Shown here: positions 5,631 through 22,359 of the stretch, in pieces
Layout: each line of letters opens with the position of its first letter
Position numbering within the stretch: position 1 is the first letter of the stretch
Assembly (NCBI GenBank): GCA_030704615.1
Contig: CM060733.1
Coordinates: 9,238,001-9,302,000, forward strand
Direction of reading: 5' to 3'
Length of the DNA stretch: 64,000 nucleotides
From: Takakia lepidozioides
Taxonomy: Eukaryota > Plantae > Bryophyta
The notes under the pieces: model-generated
Seen by the model: the letters and a program-made list of their open reading frames with translations, nothing else
What the model was told of the DNA's origin: nothing
The model's database searches: none
Position numbers and translations under genes: made by a program

Positions 5631-6094
5631 AGCAAACTTGCATTTTACATATCATTATTTGCTAGAAACAAACTCATTTATATTAGCGTCACTATGGACA
5701 TCAACGAGGGTAAATATATTTTGACCTTTATCGTAAGTCATAATTACTGAACTAGTAATAGAATCAATATCTATCCATTTACTATCAGTGACATCGTACT
5801 TGAACTTCAGATATAATGTAGACTTAGAGAAGTAATTTAGCACTACCATGATAGTGGTTGTGGGTTTGTTCAAGAGATCTACTGGCTGACGAGAGATCCC
5901 CCATCTAGTGCCCACATTCCTCCTCATCTTCTGTACCTATCCACCAGGTACTCTGATCCACACCAACAGAAACTGATCGCTACCAAATTGCCGTCAAACC
6001 AGGAAACCCTAAACCAAAATCCAAGTTCCACTTGCATCCATAGACTGCTTGACACGTGTCTTTCAAAAATACCTCCACCCTATGAGTAATTCTA

Positions 6095-14277: not shown

Positions 14278-16148
14278 ATGGAGGAACATGGTGCCAAGCT
14301 GTGAGTGCCACCTTTTGCTTGTATTACCGCCCTTCAACTCTCACTGATACCATTGACAGTCTTCTATTGTCTTCCGCACGGTAGACTTCACTGCTCAAGA
14401 TGTTAGCTATTTTAATCTTCAGCAGCTGGACATCGGTCGTTTCTGATCACGCCTTTAGCACTTGCTTCTTTATCATAGTTGATGCACATGACGGAGATTC
14501 GCGTCTCACAGCTCTCTCGTTTGAGATGAAAAGATCGCAGGTGAGGCAGTCATTTCTGACAACATGGGATCGAGACTCGATGCGACCACCCCACACAGAC
14601 GTCATTTTGAGGTCCAGAGATTTTGGAGAGGTCCATGGACACACAGCTGTTTTGGTATTCCTTACTCAATTGTTTCGACATTTGCACATAATACTAGATA
14701 ATGTACATGTTGCTACGATGTATGGTAGGTCACACTAACATCCATGGACTAGAGAGATCTGCGTATATACATGTGTGTGTATTAGTATACCGAACAGTGA
14801 TCAGCGTTTGGCGAGGACAAAATTATGAATGCATAGCCTGTGACCAACGATGTCGACCAATCCAGGTCCTAGCAAGGGAGTTTCGTTGATCCCTCCAACA
14901 AAATTTCCCTAAGAATCACCTCACAATCGTTTTAATGCTGTCAATTAGTCACCAAGTATCAGTGATTGTTGGTCTGGTAAGGGTATCAGACCCGAGTATC
15001 AGCGCTGGTATCAACCCTGGTATCAAGGACCAGACCAGCCTGGTCTTAAGTTCTACATACCAGGTCATATACCAGACCCAGGCTGGTATCCGTTTTCTCA
15101 TACCAGCCACAATAACAGTACCCCCAGCCGTCTTCCTCATTTACTCTGGTATTTGTATTATATTAATTTATGTATGTACTTATTTATATATTTTTATGTT
15201 TATTGTATTTGTTTTCACTGGATATTTGGTAAATTTGTAAGTCAAGATGCTTAGGAATGATACCAGAATTGATATCTCACACGAGCTGGTATTGTGGTCA
15301 TGATACTCATACTCATACCAGTATCTGGGAAAAAATACATCCACCATTATATAGACCAGACTTGGTATGAAAGTTTTGTGATGGGGCTGGTACCTGAAGG
15401 ACCAGTCTGGTATGTCCTAAACCTGATACCAGACCAACACTGGAACCTTGGTACAATGTCGATGCATTCAACATCATGCTGGCATAGTTATGAAGTAGCT
15501 GGTCATGTATTGAGTTATGAGTTGCATTTAAGTGCTGCTACCCCTCCACCTAATCATCGTTGTTAAGAATCAGCTCTGACATATGATCACATGACCGTTT
15601 GTTCTCTCTCTCACACTGACAGCTACATGCTAATATCTTCCTTTGGGTCTCTCTTATATATGTGCAATTCATGTTCACAGGTGGGCAAGTCCAAAGTGTT
15701 CAAGGCTATGTTTCTTCATAACATGGAAGAATCATCCACAAGAATAGTGAAAATGGATATGGAGCATTTGGCCGTTAAAGCATTTGTAAGCTTTTTTTAC
15801 ACAGGTTATGTGGAAGCTGACATCATGCGTGAACACGTGTTTGAGCTCCTGCAAGCTGCAGACATGTATGAGCTTAGTTTGCTGAAATCTGAGTGTGTAA
15901 ATGCGCTGAAGTCGAACATCCCTGCTCACCTCGTCTTTGAAACCTATGTCATGGGGAACCTATACAATGCCGAGGAACTCAAGCAAGCTGTGATTGAATA
16001 TCTGGCCACTCATGTGCCTGATTTGTCTGAAGTTGTTGGTTTTGACACTTTTCTTCGAGAGCACCCAGATATACTGGCAAATCTGACTGTTGCAGTTATC
16101 AGAGAGCTGAATCGAGAAAAGCTATGGATCAGTTTCATAGATCTGTGA
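14278..16148 (+). CDS. BTB/POZ domain protein (At4g08455-like); exons ~14278-14300 (tentative), 14423-14654, 15681-16148
   Basis: PPHTDVIL...HTAVL|VGKSKVFKAMF...FFYTG...LLQAADMYEL..LKSEC; GT-AG intron 14655-15680 at the same position as in the neighbouring paralogue. Start codon uncertain. Confidence 0.8.
14960..15442. mobile_element. hAT-like MITE in BTB intron
   Basis: TIR TGTTGGTCTGGTA / TACCAGACCAACACTG, many ATACC/GGTAT motifs; same termini as 23979-24372. Confidence 0.75.
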
Positions 16149-17130: not shown

Positions 17131-18979
17131 TCAGCTAACTCTCCTCCTCTTGACAGCAGCAGCTTCAGCCTCTTTATCCTCACCCCCGCCATCGGCATCC
17201 ACATCTGCCTCTAATGTTGACAAGGTTAGAAAGTTGAAGTTGAAAGTCAACAGTCTCATTGAATGCATGACATTTAACGAAAGTTAGCAAACATAGTGTT
17301 TAGTATTGAATAATTACTGTTCATGTTCGTACGATCAACATAGAGCCCACCCGCAAGGGCGTATTTACGCTGATTTCAGTCAGCGTCACATCTGTATCTC
17401 TCTCTTATGATCATAACAATGGGGCCTGGATAGGTGCAGATTTGCTGCCAGGTGGTCTCTCAAAAATATCTTATCAATATACACACCTACTGATTGAAGC
17501 CACACAGCTGCATCAAGGCACCCTCTTGCACACTTACCCAAGGTGTGTTCAGATAGTTTCTTGCGCTTCAGCCGTTTCACAACCCCGTCATAGAGTTCCA
17601 TTACTGCCTCAGGACACTTTTTTGAGAAGGTGTCATATCCTTCAAGTGCTGAAACATCATCAATTTGTGTTGCAGCATAATCAATCACTCCATCTTTCAC
17701 AATGTCAGAGTTGTGTCTCCAGCCCACAACATAGGTAAGTAGCACCTTGCTCGGATTTAGGGACTTGAGTATTTCTTCCTCGCAGAGTGACTTTAATGCT
17801 TTCACCCCATACTTGTCTGCAGCTTGCAAGAGCTCAACTAAGTGACTTCTCAATGTGCGCTGGTTCACATTGGCTCGGTAAAAGAAGAGCACAAATGCGT
17901 CCAGTGCTGTGTAACCCATATCCATCTTCATGGTGTCAGATTCCGGCATTGGAATACCAAACAAGGCCTTGAATACTTCTGACTGGCTGACCTGTTAACC
18001 CTCCAACAACCATTCAAATAAGTGAGACGACACTAACCTTTTGAAACAGTCAGACCACGTCAATGACAAGTCCTATCCACAAAAGAACTCGACAAAGAAT
18101 CAGTGTAAGAATACATCATCTTCTAGAGTACATGGCAACCATTGATGTCAACAGACGACCTCTATGAGTGAAGACTCACAAAAACCACTTCAGCAGTACA
18201 TTTTGGCTTGCTCTCAGCTGAACCTTTGCATGAGGACAGTTTTAGACAGGAACCCACACAAGCCCATGTTGGCAAAGGACTAGGTGGTGAAAATTTTACT
18301 CTACCATGCAATCCACCAAGACCATGTCCTTCTACAATACTTACACAATGTACATGAAATCACCAATCAGCCACCTACTATCACATATCTATTAGGAAAG
18401 ATGACCAGTAACCGCCTTCCAAAGAAATTCAAACCCAAGGTCCAAAGACATTGGCTTCCGTCATGACAACTCGGATAATTCGTGAAATTGACGAAAATGG
18501 CCAACTCACAAATAAGAGAAGCCAGATTTTTTCCACGAAACAAGATGCCCTCCAGACAGAGATGGACCTGACACAAAGAGTCAAAGACCAGTTGATTCGC
18601 TTGAGGATGTATATAGCCTGGCTCCCTCCACAGTGGCAACACTTACCAAGACAGCTTTATGGGCGTAGACCTTGCGCCCCTCTGTTGACTCAAAAATGAT
18701 ATCCGTATATGGTGGCGGCAAATTGTCGGGATCCTTGTTACTCTCAAATTCCTTGCCTTGCAACTTGCGCTCAATGCTGGCAAGCTTCTCCTTCGTTTTC
18801 TCTAGTTCATCTACCAGAGCACGGTGCTGCTCAAATGAATCTTTACAACGCGCATCTTGTTTGCAAGTATCACAGCATATAATCTCTTTGTAGATAGTTG
18901 ACTCTGAACCTTCACACACAATATCTTGACTCCCGCACACTGTGCATAATTCTTGCTTGAATGGTTGTACAGCCAGGGT
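17131..18979 (-). CDS. BTB/POZ domain protein; exons ~18979/18996-18647, 17991-17538, 17210-17131; 5' end lies further upstream
   Basis: Cys-rich and coiled-coil N-terminal part, PPYTDIIF..AHKAVL|VSQSEVFKALF..LLQAADKYGVKALKSLCE. GTAAGT donors at 18646 and 17537; last exon ends in NLS-like VKRRRVS*. Confidence 0.85.
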
Positions 18980-19406
18980 CTGTATAGTTGCTGTGCCTGA
19001 AGACTAGTAATTGGACAGCTTTTCAGTTGAGGAATGTACAAATATCAGACAGCCACTGACCAAATAACTTCACAAGGTCACCATCAAATACTTCCTTGGA
19101 TCTACTAGAGATCCAATATTATGAAGTCAATAATTACTATGCAGAACCTGAGACACAAGGTCCCCATCAACTACCATCATAGTTCTATATCGATGTCAGA
19201 AATATCACCAAGTTATGTCCTCAATCTTCTCAATTGCATCTTCTAAAAGGTCAGGAGCTCAGCAAATTCAAGAGGATGAGACAACTAAATAGGTATTGAT
19301 CAGAAAAAATGTCCAGGGTAGTTGCATTATCAAGATTCCCCAAACAGTCACATGACCGAGAACAACGCTTCTCCCAAACACCTAATTGACATGAAACTTG
19401 TTTTAC

Positions 19407-21773
19407 CTTTGGCCTTTTGGACAGTTCCATTTCTAGAGCCAATGCCTTAGACCAGTCAATTAATCTCCCTGTAGCTTTGTCTACTTCTCCTGAGACGATT
19501 CGCTGCATTGCTCGTTCACGAATACCATCAAATTCAGCATCATCTCTGTGACAAGCACAAGCATTAGAAGAACACACAAGAAACACACTCCTATAACACA
19601 CCACCAGCATGAATATGCAGCTTTACCCCACCATAAATCCTGCAAACAAATGTACGGTATAAATCGATTGATGAGCAATAACACACCTCAAATATGTTCC
19701 AGCAACTCTAGGGCCTGTGTTAAGCGTATCGGGCTCAATAGGCACTCCTGCATACTGTAACCTGCGTGCCAATAGCACCGTAAATTTCAGAGGGCTTGCG
19801 TGCGAGGCCTGTCATCAAACAACAAACTCAAACTCAATGTGATATGACACAGAGCCTTACCTGCCTAAACCAGTTGTGCGCCCTGTCTTGTTTGTGTAGT
19901 ACTCTCCCCCCAGCCCTGTTTCCTTTGTCATTGTCCTCAACCAACTAGCAAGAGTTCTTACTCCCACGGGTGAGCGAGTGTACCACTGCACACCCAAATC
20001 AAGGAATGAGACCGCGAGGCTGGTATGTTCTTGCAGGAAATATTGACTCTCTGCATGCATGCCTATGATCAAAGAATACTCCATTGTAAATGATTCGTTC
20101 TGTTGATGTACAGATGCTCGAATCATAAGTTGAATTTCTAAACAACTCGCTCACCACGGACAATTTCAAGAACAAAACAGATAATGCATCAAATAGTCAT
20201 ATCAATATACCACAGTTCTCGAGGTTGGGTTCTTGATGTCTGTAAGAAATAACGGATGTGGCGGCGGTTCATCTTCTGCCCACTTCGGTTTGTGCTCTAT
20301 CAAGGTTTTGTACGTTACGACAACATCCTCAACATAGCATGTGACAGGGCGGGTGTACTTCTCTGCTTGGGCATGTTGAAGATCAGACTTCCAACTTTTG
20401 TATTGTTTCTCAAATCTGATAGCAAGAGCACATACTTCATTAAAGGCAAACAGATCACAATTCCCAATAGATCTGACTAAAGCCAAAAAGGTAACAGCAT
20501 CCTATAATCTAATTATTGGTACCTGATTGTCAAAGTAACAATGACCCAAGTACCTGGATCCAAACCATCATCTGCACCTACCCAGTAACAACAGTTTAGT
20601 ATTAGACATCAAAACCAGCCCACCAAAGAGTTTATACCTCAGAAACTCGCCATGTTGGTCTTTTCCCACAGAAAAATCCAGATCGGTGAGTTCATGGAGC
20701 TCAGCAGGACCGCGAATGAAGAAATTTCGTGTTGCAAAATATGCAAATCGCATCGAGCACCCCTTTGCAGTAGTACTCTTATAGCTAGGTAATGCAAGCA
20801 TGGAAGCTTCATCATGAAGCGTCAAGACATCAATGCGTTTTCTTCTCTTTCCCAAACCAAGCCTGCCAGCAGTTGACATGGTTTCAGTTACAGCTACCTG
20901 AGCCTTCTTGAATTTGACATCCGACATGATGTTGAATGGTACCTCAGCAACCCCTGTTTGTGCAACGCGTGCATCTTGGTGAGCACGAATGATTCGACCA
21001 ATAGCCCTCAAGAGACTTCCAGTGCTGTTGAACCATAACACATGCATGTAACACATCAGGACATCCACAATTATCATACAGAGCAAGTGCATACCTGAGT
21101 GCTAGGAAAGAAAAAACAAGCTCATAGGTGGAGGCAACCAACCAAAATACAACAATATCGAGAGGTTCAAATGTACTTACGTTTCAGGAGGATATTCTTT
21201 TCCATTTTGCTTTCGAACTTGGTACAAAAAACTCCCCACCATTTCAGCAAGCTCTTTCATATCTCGGTCACAGAAATCTTCAATGGATTCATTAATGTCT
21301 ATCTTGCAAAGTGAACGCCATGCATCAAATCTGGCGCGAGCCCAGGCCTCTGCACGCTTGCTTCTCGTCCTATCCCTATTGAGAATATTTGGAGACTCCT
21401 CTTCACTGATTCGACGAACACCCTGCCCGAGAGGCTCGGCCTTGCCATCAGACACCATCTGATTACCCTCAGACTCATCGTCGTCAGAAAGGGGAGCATC
21501 ACTATCGCTATTGCCAGGACCTTGGTTATTGATGTCCACCCCTGGTGTGACAGCAGGGCCTTCATCCTCAGATTCCTCCCCGTGATCTTGAGTCAAGACA
21601 AGTGACTGCGGAGGCGGTAATACAGCAGAGGGAAGGTCAGCGTTAACACTCTCAACCTCCAGAGGTTCCGTGCTTGCAGGAGCAACCAGGGATGATGGCA
21701 ATGGAGTTGAACTTAGGCCAAGTGAAAACGTAGGGTCAACATGGGAGCTCAATTCCCCTACAAAATCTGCCAT
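19407..21773 (-). CDS. Crypton/DUF3504-type tyrosine-recombinase-like protein; exons 21773-21181, 21024-20638, 20415-20211, 19985-19861, 19761-19687, 19545-19407 (508 codons, 3' end open)
   Basis: All five introns are GT-AG with matching phases and no stops. Motifs in order: KQNGKEYPPET..SLLRAIGR, NIMSDVKF, FFIRGPAELHEL, PLFL, VWYTRSPVGVRTL, GL..YYTNKTGRTTGLGRLQYAGVP, NTGPR. Confidence 0.8.
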
Positions 21774-22109
21774 CTGGCAATTTAAAAGATGCCAATCCAA
21801 CCGAAATCTGCAACGAAGGACCTGCCACAAAAATTCTAGGGAATAAGGGTCGAGATCACGAACAGGTCAAAATAAATTGTAAGAAAAAACTCACGTTCTC
21901 TGCCGAATAGTAAACAACCTAAAGCGTTCAGGATTCTTTGAGACACAACAAAAAACACATCTTACCAAATCAAACAGGCCATGGCTGAAGCGCTAATATC
22001 TTGAAGTGCAATCGCCGCATGATCTGGAAACGCATTGTGGAGAAAAACACGCTCCCTGATTCCTCCAGCACAATCCCTCCAAAAGCCTCAATGCAATGTT
22101 TCGCAAGCC

Positions 22110-22359
22110 CCTCCAGATGCAGATCACAGAACTCTAATCCTCGTAACCTCCCAAAATTCGACACGAAGACCATTCCACACGTAAAAGACCTCGATGAACA
22201 TGCCACACTGCCCGATTCTATGCCAAACTCTGCGAAAATCTCAATGTAATCCCCCCAACCTCTCCAGACGCAGATCACAACACTCTAATCCTCACAACCT
22301 CCCACAATCCGACACCAAGACTATTCCAAGCGTAAAGACCTCGATGCACAGGCCCTGCC
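22110..22359. repeat. Two diverged ~100-bp direct repeats upstream of the DUF3504 gene
   Basis: CTCCAGAYGCAGATCACA..ACTCTAATCCTC...AAGACCTCGATG at ~22110 and ~22261. Confidence 0.8.

What the first reader, a model, noticed from the sequence alone, without database searches (positions are those of the whole stretch)
17131..21773. Possible Crypton (DUF3504)-BTB fusion gene: a plant parallel to animal KCTD1
Seen: the minus-strand BTB gene has no ATG between the in-frame stop at 19006-19004 and its first intron (the ORF-track start at 18940 is GTG), so it needs an upstream exon. The nearest substantial same-strand coding sequence is the DUF3504 gene, whose sixth exon ends at a good phase-0 donor (AAG|GTAAAA, 19407). 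A phase-0 acceptor (TACAG|ACC, 18979) would join it in frame to the BTB gene, giving about 796 aa: acidic N-terminus, recombinase-like fold, Cys-rich/coiled-coil region, BTB, NLS-like tail. Known: vertebrate KCTD1 couples a Crypton-derived DUF3504 domain to a BTB domain, and many plant BTB proteins are CUL3 adaptors. Inference: an independent domestication, or a Crypton inserted into the BTB gene's 5' region. Caveats: the AG at 18998-18997 would give an out-of-frame join, and a short ATG exon near 19180-19148 with a weak donor is an alternative start.
Basis: partly seen in the sequence, partly recalled or inferred. Interest (0 to 1): 0.85.

Follow-up and report, generated by a model that had tools for sequence, protein, structure and literature searches.

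The report
Dead transposon recombinase fused to BTB
This is one conserved plant (moss-type) gene in which a disabled Crypton-transposon recombinase has become the front half of a SPOP-like BTB ubiquitin-ligase adaptor, an independent repeat of the domain marriage seen in vertebrate KCTD1.

Summary
On the minus strand, six GT-AG exons (21773-19407) give an open 508-codon recombinase-like reading frame that ends at a phase-0 donor. The next BTB exon has no in-frame ATG.

The acceptor is most likely 19003, not 18979. Both sites join in frame, giving about 804 or 796 aa.

The support comes from relatives:
- Spliced RNA contigs from two related lineages join recombinase exon 6 directly to BTB exon 1 at the homologous site.
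- Three other genomic loci keep all eight exons colinear and open, with the same donor and acceptor.
- Physcomitrium patens shares the microsynteny, but its copy is degenerate.
- dN/dS is 0.06-0.14 on the recombinase half, with dS above 1.
- There are no terminal repeats around the recombinase half.

The recombinase half folds like QRICH1's DUF3504 module (Z 15.2) and like Cre. It appears to have lost the active-site His and Tyr. The BTB half is SPOP/BPM-like.

I found no paper describing this gene. Its function as a CUL3 adaptor with a dead-recombinase recognition module is inferred, not shown.

The parts
21181..21773 (-). Exon D1. Start codon ATG at 21773 (MAD...), a variable acidic N-terminus, then the conserved helical start of the recombinase N-terminal domain, ending ...VRKQNGKEYPPE(T).
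   Evidence: The MAD start is conserved in L002, L007, L008 and P0110. Identity to the loci that carry it is 41-54% over the whole exon, and higher in the C-terminal third.
20638..21024 (-). Exon D2. Rest of the N-terminal domain and start of the catalytic-type domain, including the box I Arg in FFIRGPAELHEL.
   Evidence: 74-84% identity to L002 and L004. dN/dS 0.08-0.17. Atlas look-alikes are DUF3504 clusters, score 0.97.
20211..20415 (-). Exon D3.
   Evidence: 81% identity to L002. dN/dS 0.05.
19861..19985 (-). Exon D4. Carries the box II-like motif TNKTGRTT, with Lys in place of His and the Arg kept.
   Evidence: 98% identity to L002. dN/dS 0.01. Alignment A2.
19687..19761 (-). Exon D5. Motif TGPRVAGTYL; the position that is His in distant relatives is Pro here.
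19407..19545 (-). Exon D6. Starts (R)DD, where distant relatives have the presumed catalytic Tyr. Ends at the phase-0 donor AAG|GTAAAA.
   Evidence: (donor conserved in L002 and L004). Spliced to BTB exon 1 in L001, L007 and L008.
19004..19406 (-). Intron between the recombinase half and the BTB half (403 nt).
   Evidence: Not conserved at nucleotide level with L002. The read-through tails differ in every lineage. Retained in RNA contig L009.
18647..19003 (-). Exon B1. Variable Cys-containing linker, a conserved coiled-coil-like stretch (HRALVDELEKTKEKL...) and the first strands of the BTB domain. It has no in-frame Met. 18979 is an alternative in-frame acceptor.
   Evidence: The conservation block with L002 starts at 19005.
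17538..17991 (-). Exon B2. Rest of the BTB domain plus the BACK/3-box-like helices (SPOP/BPM type).
   Evidence: Pfam BTB 27 bits and BACK_BPM_SPOP 22.5 bits (below cut-off). 89% identity to L002. The orthologue matches SPOP 206-356 at E 1e-11.
17131..17210 (-). Putative last exon (acidic tail, KRRRVS, stop at 17133-17131). Unverified.
   Evidence: Frame arithmetic only. No homology in L002 or L004. The relatives' RNA contigs end with a stop just past the homologous donor.
14526..16148 (+). Convergent neighbouring BTB-BACK paralogue, given as context. It is 42% identical to B2 and has no recombinase part.
   Evidence: The same convergent arrangement is found at the P. patens locus L011.

Best explanation
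The stretch 21773-17131 (minus strand) is one protein-coding gene of about 800 aa.

Architecture:
- The N-terminal ~508 aa (six exons) are an anciently domesticated Crypton-type tyrosine recombinase. It keeps the two-domain recombinase fold but appears to have lost the active-site His (now Pro) and the nucleophile Tyr (now Asp). It is therefore a binding module, not an enzyme.
- Exon 6 is spliced from 19407 to 19003, phase 0 to phase 0, onto a linker and coiled coil followed by a SPOP/BPM-type BTB-BACK domain.
- In this genome the BTB half has no start codon of its own.

Inferred mechanism:
- The BTB-BACK half dimerises and recruits a CUL3 ubiquitin ligase, as SPOP and plant BPM proteins do.
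- The dead recombinase sits where their MATH domain sits. It would supply target recognition, either of DNA or of DNA-bound or recombinase-like proteins.

What is shown: the gene structure, the fusion in relatives' RNA, conservation under purifying selection, and the folds.
What is inferred: splicing in this particular species, CUL3 binding, and the target.

The confidence given is for the single-fused-gene claim. The CUL3-adaptor mechanism alone would rate about 0.5.
For: 1. Open six-exon frame, phase-0 donor, and no Met in BTB exon 1.
2. RNA contigs from relatives:
   - L001 reads ...LALEMEMPKKSK|FAGTRIQ... straight across the junction and also lacks BTB intron 1.
   - L007 (3668 nt) carries D1-D6, B1 and B2 on one intron-free molecule.
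   - L008 is 97-99% identical to genomic L004 and joins L004 position 5559 to 5870-5872.
3. L002/L003 and L004 keep all eight exons colinear and open, with conserved AG|GTA donors and YAG| acceptors at the junction.
4. Nucleotide similarity to L002 is confined to exons, and the B1 block starts at 19005.
5. Selection:
   - dN/dS of the recombinase half is 0.057 against L002 and 0.138 against L004.
   - dN/dS of the BTB half is 0.076 and 0.184.
   - dS ranges from 0.96 to 1.58.
6. Microsynteny with P. patens, including the convergent BTB paralogue.
7. No flanking inverted or direct repeats, and only one copy in the window.
8. Fold of the orthologue's D1c-D4 (pLDDT 82.6):
   - QRICH1, PDB 9hjt_H: Z 15.2, 3.2 A over 143 residues.
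   - Cre: Z 12.8 over about 256 residues.
   - XerH: Z 10.7.
9. Motifs: GP[RK]....Y..DD in the fused clade against GH[RK].....Y..YD in distant land-plant relatives.
10. BTB half: Pfam BTB 4e-17 on orthologue P0108, and SPOP BTB-BACK at 1e-11.
Against: - There is no transcript evidence from this genome itself.
- RNA contig L009 retains the D6-B1 intron, which would give a recombinase-only product ending 3 codons later. A short isoform is therefore possible.
- Other lineages have in-frame Mets in B1, or in the intron (L002), so BTB-only isoforms cannot be excluded there.
- L007 carries 16 extra nt between D4 and D5 that break the frame in that contig.
- The P. patens copy is degenerate, so the gene is dispensable in at least one moss.
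- CUL3 binding and any target are untested.
- The assignment of the catalytic Tyr column rests on the canonical His+9 spacing, not on a structure of the C-terminal part.
Confidence: 0.82

Rival explanations
1. These are two neighbouring genes, a recombinase-like gene and a BTB gene. The joined RNAs in relatives are occasional read-through ('conjoined') transcripts, and the main products are separate proteins.
For: L009 retains the junction intron, and the frame then stops after 3 to 51 codons depending on lineage. Vertebrate KCTD1 also makes a BTB-only isoform (PMC3212892). L002 has an in-frame ATG in the intron.
Against: - In the window the BTB exon has no in-frame Met, and the first Met lies inside the BTB domain.
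- Phase-0 to phase-0 compatibility and both splice sites are kept in every lineage at dS above 1.
- The read-through tails and the intronic ATG are not conserved.
- Two independent lineages give spliced contigs.
Confidence: 0.1
2. A recent or lineage-specific Crypton-like transposon copy landed in the 5' region of a BTB gene. The apparent fusion is a by-product, and the BTB gene is disrupted or pseudogenised.
For: First-stage notes report Crypton-like elements elsewhere in this genome (unchecked). BTB exon 1 lacks a start codon. The P. patens copy is degenerate.
Against: - The same exon-by-exon arrangement occurs in at least three other lineages, and there is microsynteny with P. patens.
- dN/dS is 0.06-0.14 with saturated dS.
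- There are no terminal repeats or target duplication, and intron sequences are not conserved while exons are.
- The catalytic residues are lost in all lineages.
Confidence: 0.03
3. It is a fused gene, but the recombinase half is still catalytically competent: a DNA-cutting or DNA-joining enzyme tethered to a BTB oligomerisation domain.
For: The box I Arg and the box II Arg are retained. Lys in place of the box II His is family-wide and is tolerated in type IB topoisomerases (general knowledge). A Tyr (GTY) lies three residues before the lost position.
Against: The Tyr column at His+9 is Asp, and the His is Pro, in the three lineages read contiguously and in the window's own exons. Distant relatives keep both. 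The nearest fold is the non-catalytic QRICH1 module.
Confidence: 0.05

Closest known systems
Vertebrate KCTD1 isoform b (DUF3504 + BTB), Kojima & Jurka 2011, PMC3212892
   Same: An inactivated Crypton-derived recombinase domain sits N-terminal to a BTB domain in one ORF. It arose by a Crypton landing upstream of a pre-existing BTB gene, and it has been conserved for a very long time.
   Different: - Different kingdom, so the event is independent.
- The BTB here is PF00651 with a SPOP/BPM BACK region. KCTD1's BTB is the KCTD/T1 type; that rests on general knowledge and was not tested here.
- The recombinase part here is split over six exons, whereas KCTD1's lies in one exon.
- KCTD1 keeps the His; this gene has Pro there.
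- In this window the BTB half has no start codon of its own.
QRICH1 / ZMYM-type DUF3504 proteins (PDB 9hjt, Zincore; Bianchi et al. 2025 as cited in PMC13538652)
   Same: This is the closest solved fold (Z 15.2, 3.2 A over 143 residues). There are weak Pfam DUF3504 (17.9 bits) and QRICH1-domain (12.8 bits) signals in the right order on orthologue P0109. It is likewise a non-catalytic recombinase fold used as a binding module.
   Different: Sequence identity is about 13%. The Pfam scores are below cut-off. There is no BTB in QRICH1, and no glutamine-rich or MYM zinc-finger parts here.
SPOP / plant BPM MATH-BTB CUL3 substrate adaptors
   Same: The BTB plus BACK/3-box region aligns to SPOP 206-356 at E 1e-11, and Pfam finds BACK_BPM_SPOP below cut-off. 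The recognition module is N-terminal to the BTB.
   Different: There is no MATH domain; a dead recombinase and a coiled coil stand in its place. CUL3 binding was not tested.
Land-plant Crypton-like/DUF3504 proteins (e.g. Marchantia polymorpha MARPO_0141s0031, named 'DUF3504 domain-containing protein'; Riccia, Adiantum, Calypogeia)
   Same: They belong to the same family, at 25-35% identity over the whole recombinase part. They share the NK[ST]GR motif. Closer exon-ORF relatives (P0012, P0013) share the D2 exon boundary.
   Different: They keep the His and the Tyr. None of those scanned has a BTB domain. Whether they are mobile elements or host genes was not examined.

Membership tests
Pfam DUF3504 (PF12012) / Crypton-derived domain | Sequence match to PF12012 at or above the gathering score (29.7 bits) | tested here: not met
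   No hit on any window exon. Orthologue P0109 scores 17.9 bits (E 0.0035), aligned to profile positions 29-160 of 162. Distant relative P0032 scores 24 bits. All are below cut-off. The joined window model was not scanned.
Pfam DUF3504 (PF12012) / Crypton-derived domain | Two-domain tyrosine-recombinase fold closest to known DUF3504 modules | tested here: met
   AF2 model of the orthologue, pLDDT 82.6. QRICH1 (9hjt_H): Foldseek E 1e-6, VIA Z 15.2. Cre: Z 12.8 over about 256 residues. XerH, Ndc10, lambda and Tn1549 integrases rank lower. Atlas features point to DUF3504 clusters at 0.97.
Pfam DUF3504 (PF12012) / Crypton-derived domain | Loss of most of the catalytic R-H-R-Y tetrad | tested here: inconclusive
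   Both Arg are kept. The box II His is Lys family-wide. The second His is Pro, and the presumed Tyr column is Asp, in the fused clade only. Column assignment is by motif spacing, not by a structure of D5-D6.
Active Crypton DNA transposon | Intact catalytic Tyr and His; multiple copies; no fixed genomic position | tested here: not met
   Tyr and His are replaced. There is a single copy in the window and no flanking repeats. The position next to the BTB exons is conserved in L002, L004 and P. patens.
BTB/POZ domain (PF00651) | Pfam match above the gathering score | tested here: met
   Window exon B2 scores 27.4 bits against a cut-off of 20.5. Spliced orthologue P0108 scores 62.7 bits, E 4e-17, covering profile positions 10-109 of 110 across the B1/B2 junction.
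SPOP/BPM-type CUL3 substrate adaptor | BACK/3-box following the BTB; binding to CUL3; a substrate-recognition domain | tested here: inconclusive
   BACK_BPM_SPOP scores 22.5 bits against a cut-off of 27.4. The SPOP alignment spans the BTB and 3-box/BACK, residues 206-356, at E 1e-11. CUL3 binding cannot be tested here. No MATH domain was found in any Pfam scan.
KCTD1 orthologue | KCTD/T1-type BTB and vertebrate orthology | tested here: not met
   Pfam scans up to E = 1 list PF00651 and no other BTB-type family. The closest named relative of the whole gene is from Physcomitrium patens. The resemblance is architectural only.

The most novel reading that the evidence does not exclude
The protein is a CUL3 adaptor whose recognition module is a dead recombinase. 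It would dock on DNA-bound partners. One candidate partner is the still-intact Crypton-like recombinases of the same plant family, which act as multimers. Another is zinc-finger factors on DNA, as QRICH1 does. The protein would mark its partner for ubiquitylation. That would make a transposon-derived domain a degradation-based controller of its own relatives or of transcription factors. It would also mean the recombinase+BTB pairing was selected twice, in mosses and in vertebrates, for a common functional reason.
Probability: 0.15. Interest if true: 0.85.

Novelty: new variant of a known kind. Interest (0 to 1): 0.66.

Why it matters
- Domesticated Crypton recombinases (DUF3504 genes) were described as an animal and fungal story. 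Their only known marriage to a BTB domain was vertebrate KCTD1b.
- Here the same two-part architecture arose independently in the moss lineage, with a different BTB class. It has been kept under strong purifying selection across deeply diverged species.
- Convergent capture of the same transposon domain by the same partner domain suggests a functional logic, not an accident.
- It also gives a plant system for asking what a dead tyrosine recombinase does in a host protein.
- One practical point: the model moss P. patens carries only a broken copy. That may explain why the gene has gone unnoticed, and it means functional work must use another species.

Tried and rejected
- **Pfam on single window exons** found no DUF3504.
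- **Joined model.** Exons were searched apart by reference. The join was used only inside local scripts, to count frames and stops.
- **Cys-rich stretch as a zinc finger.** I considered the Cys-rich stretch of B1 as a zinc finger and rejected it as a conserved feature. Its second half is not kept in L008 or P. patens, and Atlas and Pfam gave nothing.
- **Acceptor choice.** 18979 is less likely than 19003. The short ATG exon at 19180 and the out-of-frame AG (exon start 18996) lie in sequence that is not conserved in L002.
- **Transposon ends.** A search for TIRs or direct repeats around the recombinase part found nothing meaningful.
- **Source organisms.** Paper searches for the run and sample accessions gave nothing. 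The source species of L001-L010 and of the window therefore remain unnamed.
- **Literature.** Paper searches combining DUF3504 or Crypton with moss or land-plant terms found no description of this gene.
- **Complex prediction** was not used. No plant CUL3 reference was available, and the binding claim is only inferred.
Full report
**1. What is in the window**

All features are on the minus strand.
- Six exons with GT-AG introns are 21773-21181, 21024-20638, 20415-20211, 19985-19861, 19761-19687 and 19545-19407.
- They form an open frame of 1524 nt, or 508 codons. It starts at a conserved MAD... start codon and ends at the phase-0 donor AAG|GTAAAA at 19407.
- Downstream lie the BTB exons: 19003 (or 18979) to 18647, then 17991-17538, then a putative last exon 17210-17131.
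- The first BTB exon is open from 19003 and holds no Met. The first in-frame Met of the BTB half lies inside the BTB domain, in the second BTB exon.
- Joined, the frame runs for 804 aa (19003) or 796 aa (18979) without a stop. This join was computed only locally, to count frames. The joined model was never sent to any search, family or fold tool; the exons were searched apart.

**2. Evidence that the two halves are one gene**

The evidence therefore comes from relatives.

*RNA contigs, first lineage.*
- A search with BTB exon 2 found P0003, a 314-aa product of a 979-nt JGI contig (L001). Its frame is open from base 1.
- It reads ...EGIRERAMQRIVSGEVDKSTGRLIDWSKALALEMEMPKKSK|FAGTRIQIV... That is the tail of recombinase exon 6 running straight into BTB exon 1. 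BTB intron 1 is also absent.
- A sister contig, L007 (3668 nt), carries D1, D2, D3, D4, D5, D6, B1 and B2 in order with no introns.
- The only blemish in L007 is 16 extra nt between D4 and D5. They look like use of an upstream acceptor, and they shift the frame in that contig.

*RNA contigs, second lineage.*
- L008, L009 and L010 are 97-99% identical to the genomic Logan contig L004.
- L008 lacks four of the five introns inside the recombinase half; intron 3 is retained. It joins L004 position 5559 to 5870-5872, which is the D6 donor to the B1 acceptor.
- L009 keeps the D6-B1 intron, so a recombinase-only product or pre-mRNA also exists.

*Genomic loci.*
- L002/L003 and L004 keep all eight main exons colinear and open.
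- At the junction they have AG|GTA donors and YAG| acceptors at the homologous positions. After the donor, the read-through tails are unrelated and run for 51, 39 and 3 codons.
- Nucleotide similarity between the window and L002 is confined to the exons. The B1 block begins at 19005, which is the acceptor AG. This favours 19003 over 18979.

**3. Domestication, not a fresh insertion**

| Comparison | dN/dS, recombinase half | dS, recombinase half | dN/dS, BTB half | dS, BTB half |
|---|---|---|---|---|
| window vs L002 | 0.057 | 1.38 | 0.076 | 1.58 |
| window vs L004 | 0.138 | 1.06 | 0.184 | 0.96 |

- These are Nei-Gojobori estimates. Both halves have been under purifying selection together over a deep divergence.
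- No inverted or direct repeats flank the recombinase part.
- The window holds no second copy.
- The only named relative of the whole gene is Physcomitrium patens: PHYPA_017900, PNR40498.1, A0A2K1JG63, plus an older 606-aa model. Its public models already join recombinase exons to a BTB domain.
- The P. patens locus (L011, CM009329.2) shares even the convergent BTB paralogue downstream, as in the window at 14526-16148 (+).
- However, the P. patens copy has a frameshift in D1 and a deletion running from mid-D4 to mid-B1. It is a decaying copy.
- The window's organism was not identified. On this gene it is closest to moss sequences.

**4. What the halves are**

*Recombinase half.*
- Pfam does not call DUF3504 on any window exon.
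- On the spliced orthologue P0109 it gives sub-threshold DUF3504 (17.9 bits against a cut-off of 29.7) and a QRICH1-domain signal, in the expected order.
- An AlphaFold model of P0109:125-441 (D1 C-terminal part to D4) has pLDDT 82.6.
- Its best structural match is the DUF3504 module of human QRICH1 in the Zincore complex (9hjt_H): Foldseek E 1e-6, VIA Z 15.2, 3.2 A over 143 residues.
- Next comes Cre recombinase over both domains (Z 12.8, about 256 residues). XerH, Xer, integron, lambda and Tn1549 integrases and Ndc10 follow.
- The language-model look-alikes of exon D2 are DUF3504 clusters, score 0.97.
- The family is rare: 94 hits at E below 1e-3 among 1.84 billion representatives.
- The more distant members scanned (25-35% identity over the whole recombinase part) are land-plant proteins from Riccia, Marchantia (named 'DUF3504 domain-containing protein'), Calypogeia and Adiantum. 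None of those scanned has a BTB domain.
- In an alignment of the C-terminal motifs, all members share NK[ST]GR. The distant relatives keep GH[RK] and a Tyr nine residues later.
- The fused clade reads GP[RK]..GTY..DD: His to Pro and Tyr to Asp. This holds in the three lineages read contiguously, and the window's own exons fit it.
- Taking that Tyr column as the nucleophile rests on the canonical spacing in tyrosine recombinases. It is an inference.

*BTB half.*
- It is a PF00651 BTB (62.7 bits on the spliced orthologue) followed by a BPM/SPOP-type BACK region.
- The closest solved sequences are SPOP BTB-BACK, E 1e-11, residues 206-356.
- Between the halves lie a poorly conserved Cys-containing linker and a conserved coiled-coil-like stretch.

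**5. How it most likely works**

- Shown: one conserved gene whose product carries a dead recombinase fold in front of a SPOP-like BTB-BACK.
- Inferred from SPOP and BPM biology: the BTB-BACK half dimerises and binds CUL3. The N-terminal module, standing where MATH stands in SPOP and BPM, chooses the target.
- The closest fold, QRICH1, is part of a coregulator complex that binds zinc-finger transcription factors (PDB 9hjt title; Bianchi et al. 2025, as cited in PMC13538652).
- That makes 'recognition of DNA or of DNA-bound proteins' the best guess. An attractive but untested variant is recognition of the intact Crypton-like recombinases of the same family.

**6. Comparison with the known**

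- Kojima and Jurka (PMC3212892) showed that KCTD1 isoform b arose when a Crypton landed upstream of a BTB gene, and that it is conserved in jawed vertebrates.
- The present gene repeats that architecture in another kingdom, with another BTB class and a multi-exon recombinase part. It is a parallel, not a member.
- Searches of the paper library found no description of it.
- Earlier notes of this scan list Crypton-like elements and one other Crypton-derived fusion in the same genome. I did not check those.

**7. Open points**

- Splicing in this species.
- The 3' terminal exon.
- Whether short isoforms exist.
- CUL3 binding and the target.
- The age of the fusion.
- The identity of the source organisms of the Logan and JGI contigs.

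Noticed in passing
L011:18266-21110 (Physcomitrium patens CM009329.2:1742683-1772211, reversed): The P. patens counterpart, annotated as protein-coding PHYPA_017900 / A0A2K1JG63, is degenerate. It has a frameshift in D1 and a deletion that joins mid-D4 to mid-B1, with a further frame change. The public gene models bridge these breaks.
   Followed up: partly
window 14526-16148 (+): A convergent BTB-BACK paralogue, 42% identical to B2, lies tail-to-tail with the fusion gene. The same arrangement is present at the P. patens locus (L011:22934-23772, minus strand). This suggests an old inverted duplication of the BTB gene that predates or accompanies the fusion.
   Followed up: partly
window 22108-22354: Two tandem copies (spacing about 151 nt; 78 nt at 85% identity plus an adjoining 21 nt at 90%) lie about 350-600 nt upstream of the fusion gene's start codon, in its presumed promoter or 5' region.
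   Followed up: no
L007:2582-2597; L008:1577-1753; L009:2093-2122: The relatives' RNA contigs show splicing variants. L007 has 16 extra nt before D5, which shift the frame. L008 retains intron 3 (177 nt). L009 retains the start of the D6-B1 intron, which would end the protein 3 codons after D6.
   Followed up: partly
L006 (ENA ERZ24794433 NODE_27228), 474-1875: Another related copy in a metagenome assembly shows D2 and D3 each split between two frames. These are apparent frameshifts or assembly errors.
   Followed up: no
P0012, P0013: Exon-sized ORFs about 40% identical to D2 end at the same ...YLR| boundary. The wider plant Crypton-like family therefore shares at least this intron position with the fused gene. 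That points to an intron-bearing common ancestor.
   Followed up: no
P0026 (Adiantum capillus-veneris KAI5068402.1): This 790-aa fern model combines PPR repeats (residues 109-165) with a Crypton-like region (404-527). It could be another fusion or a merged gene model.
   Followed up: no
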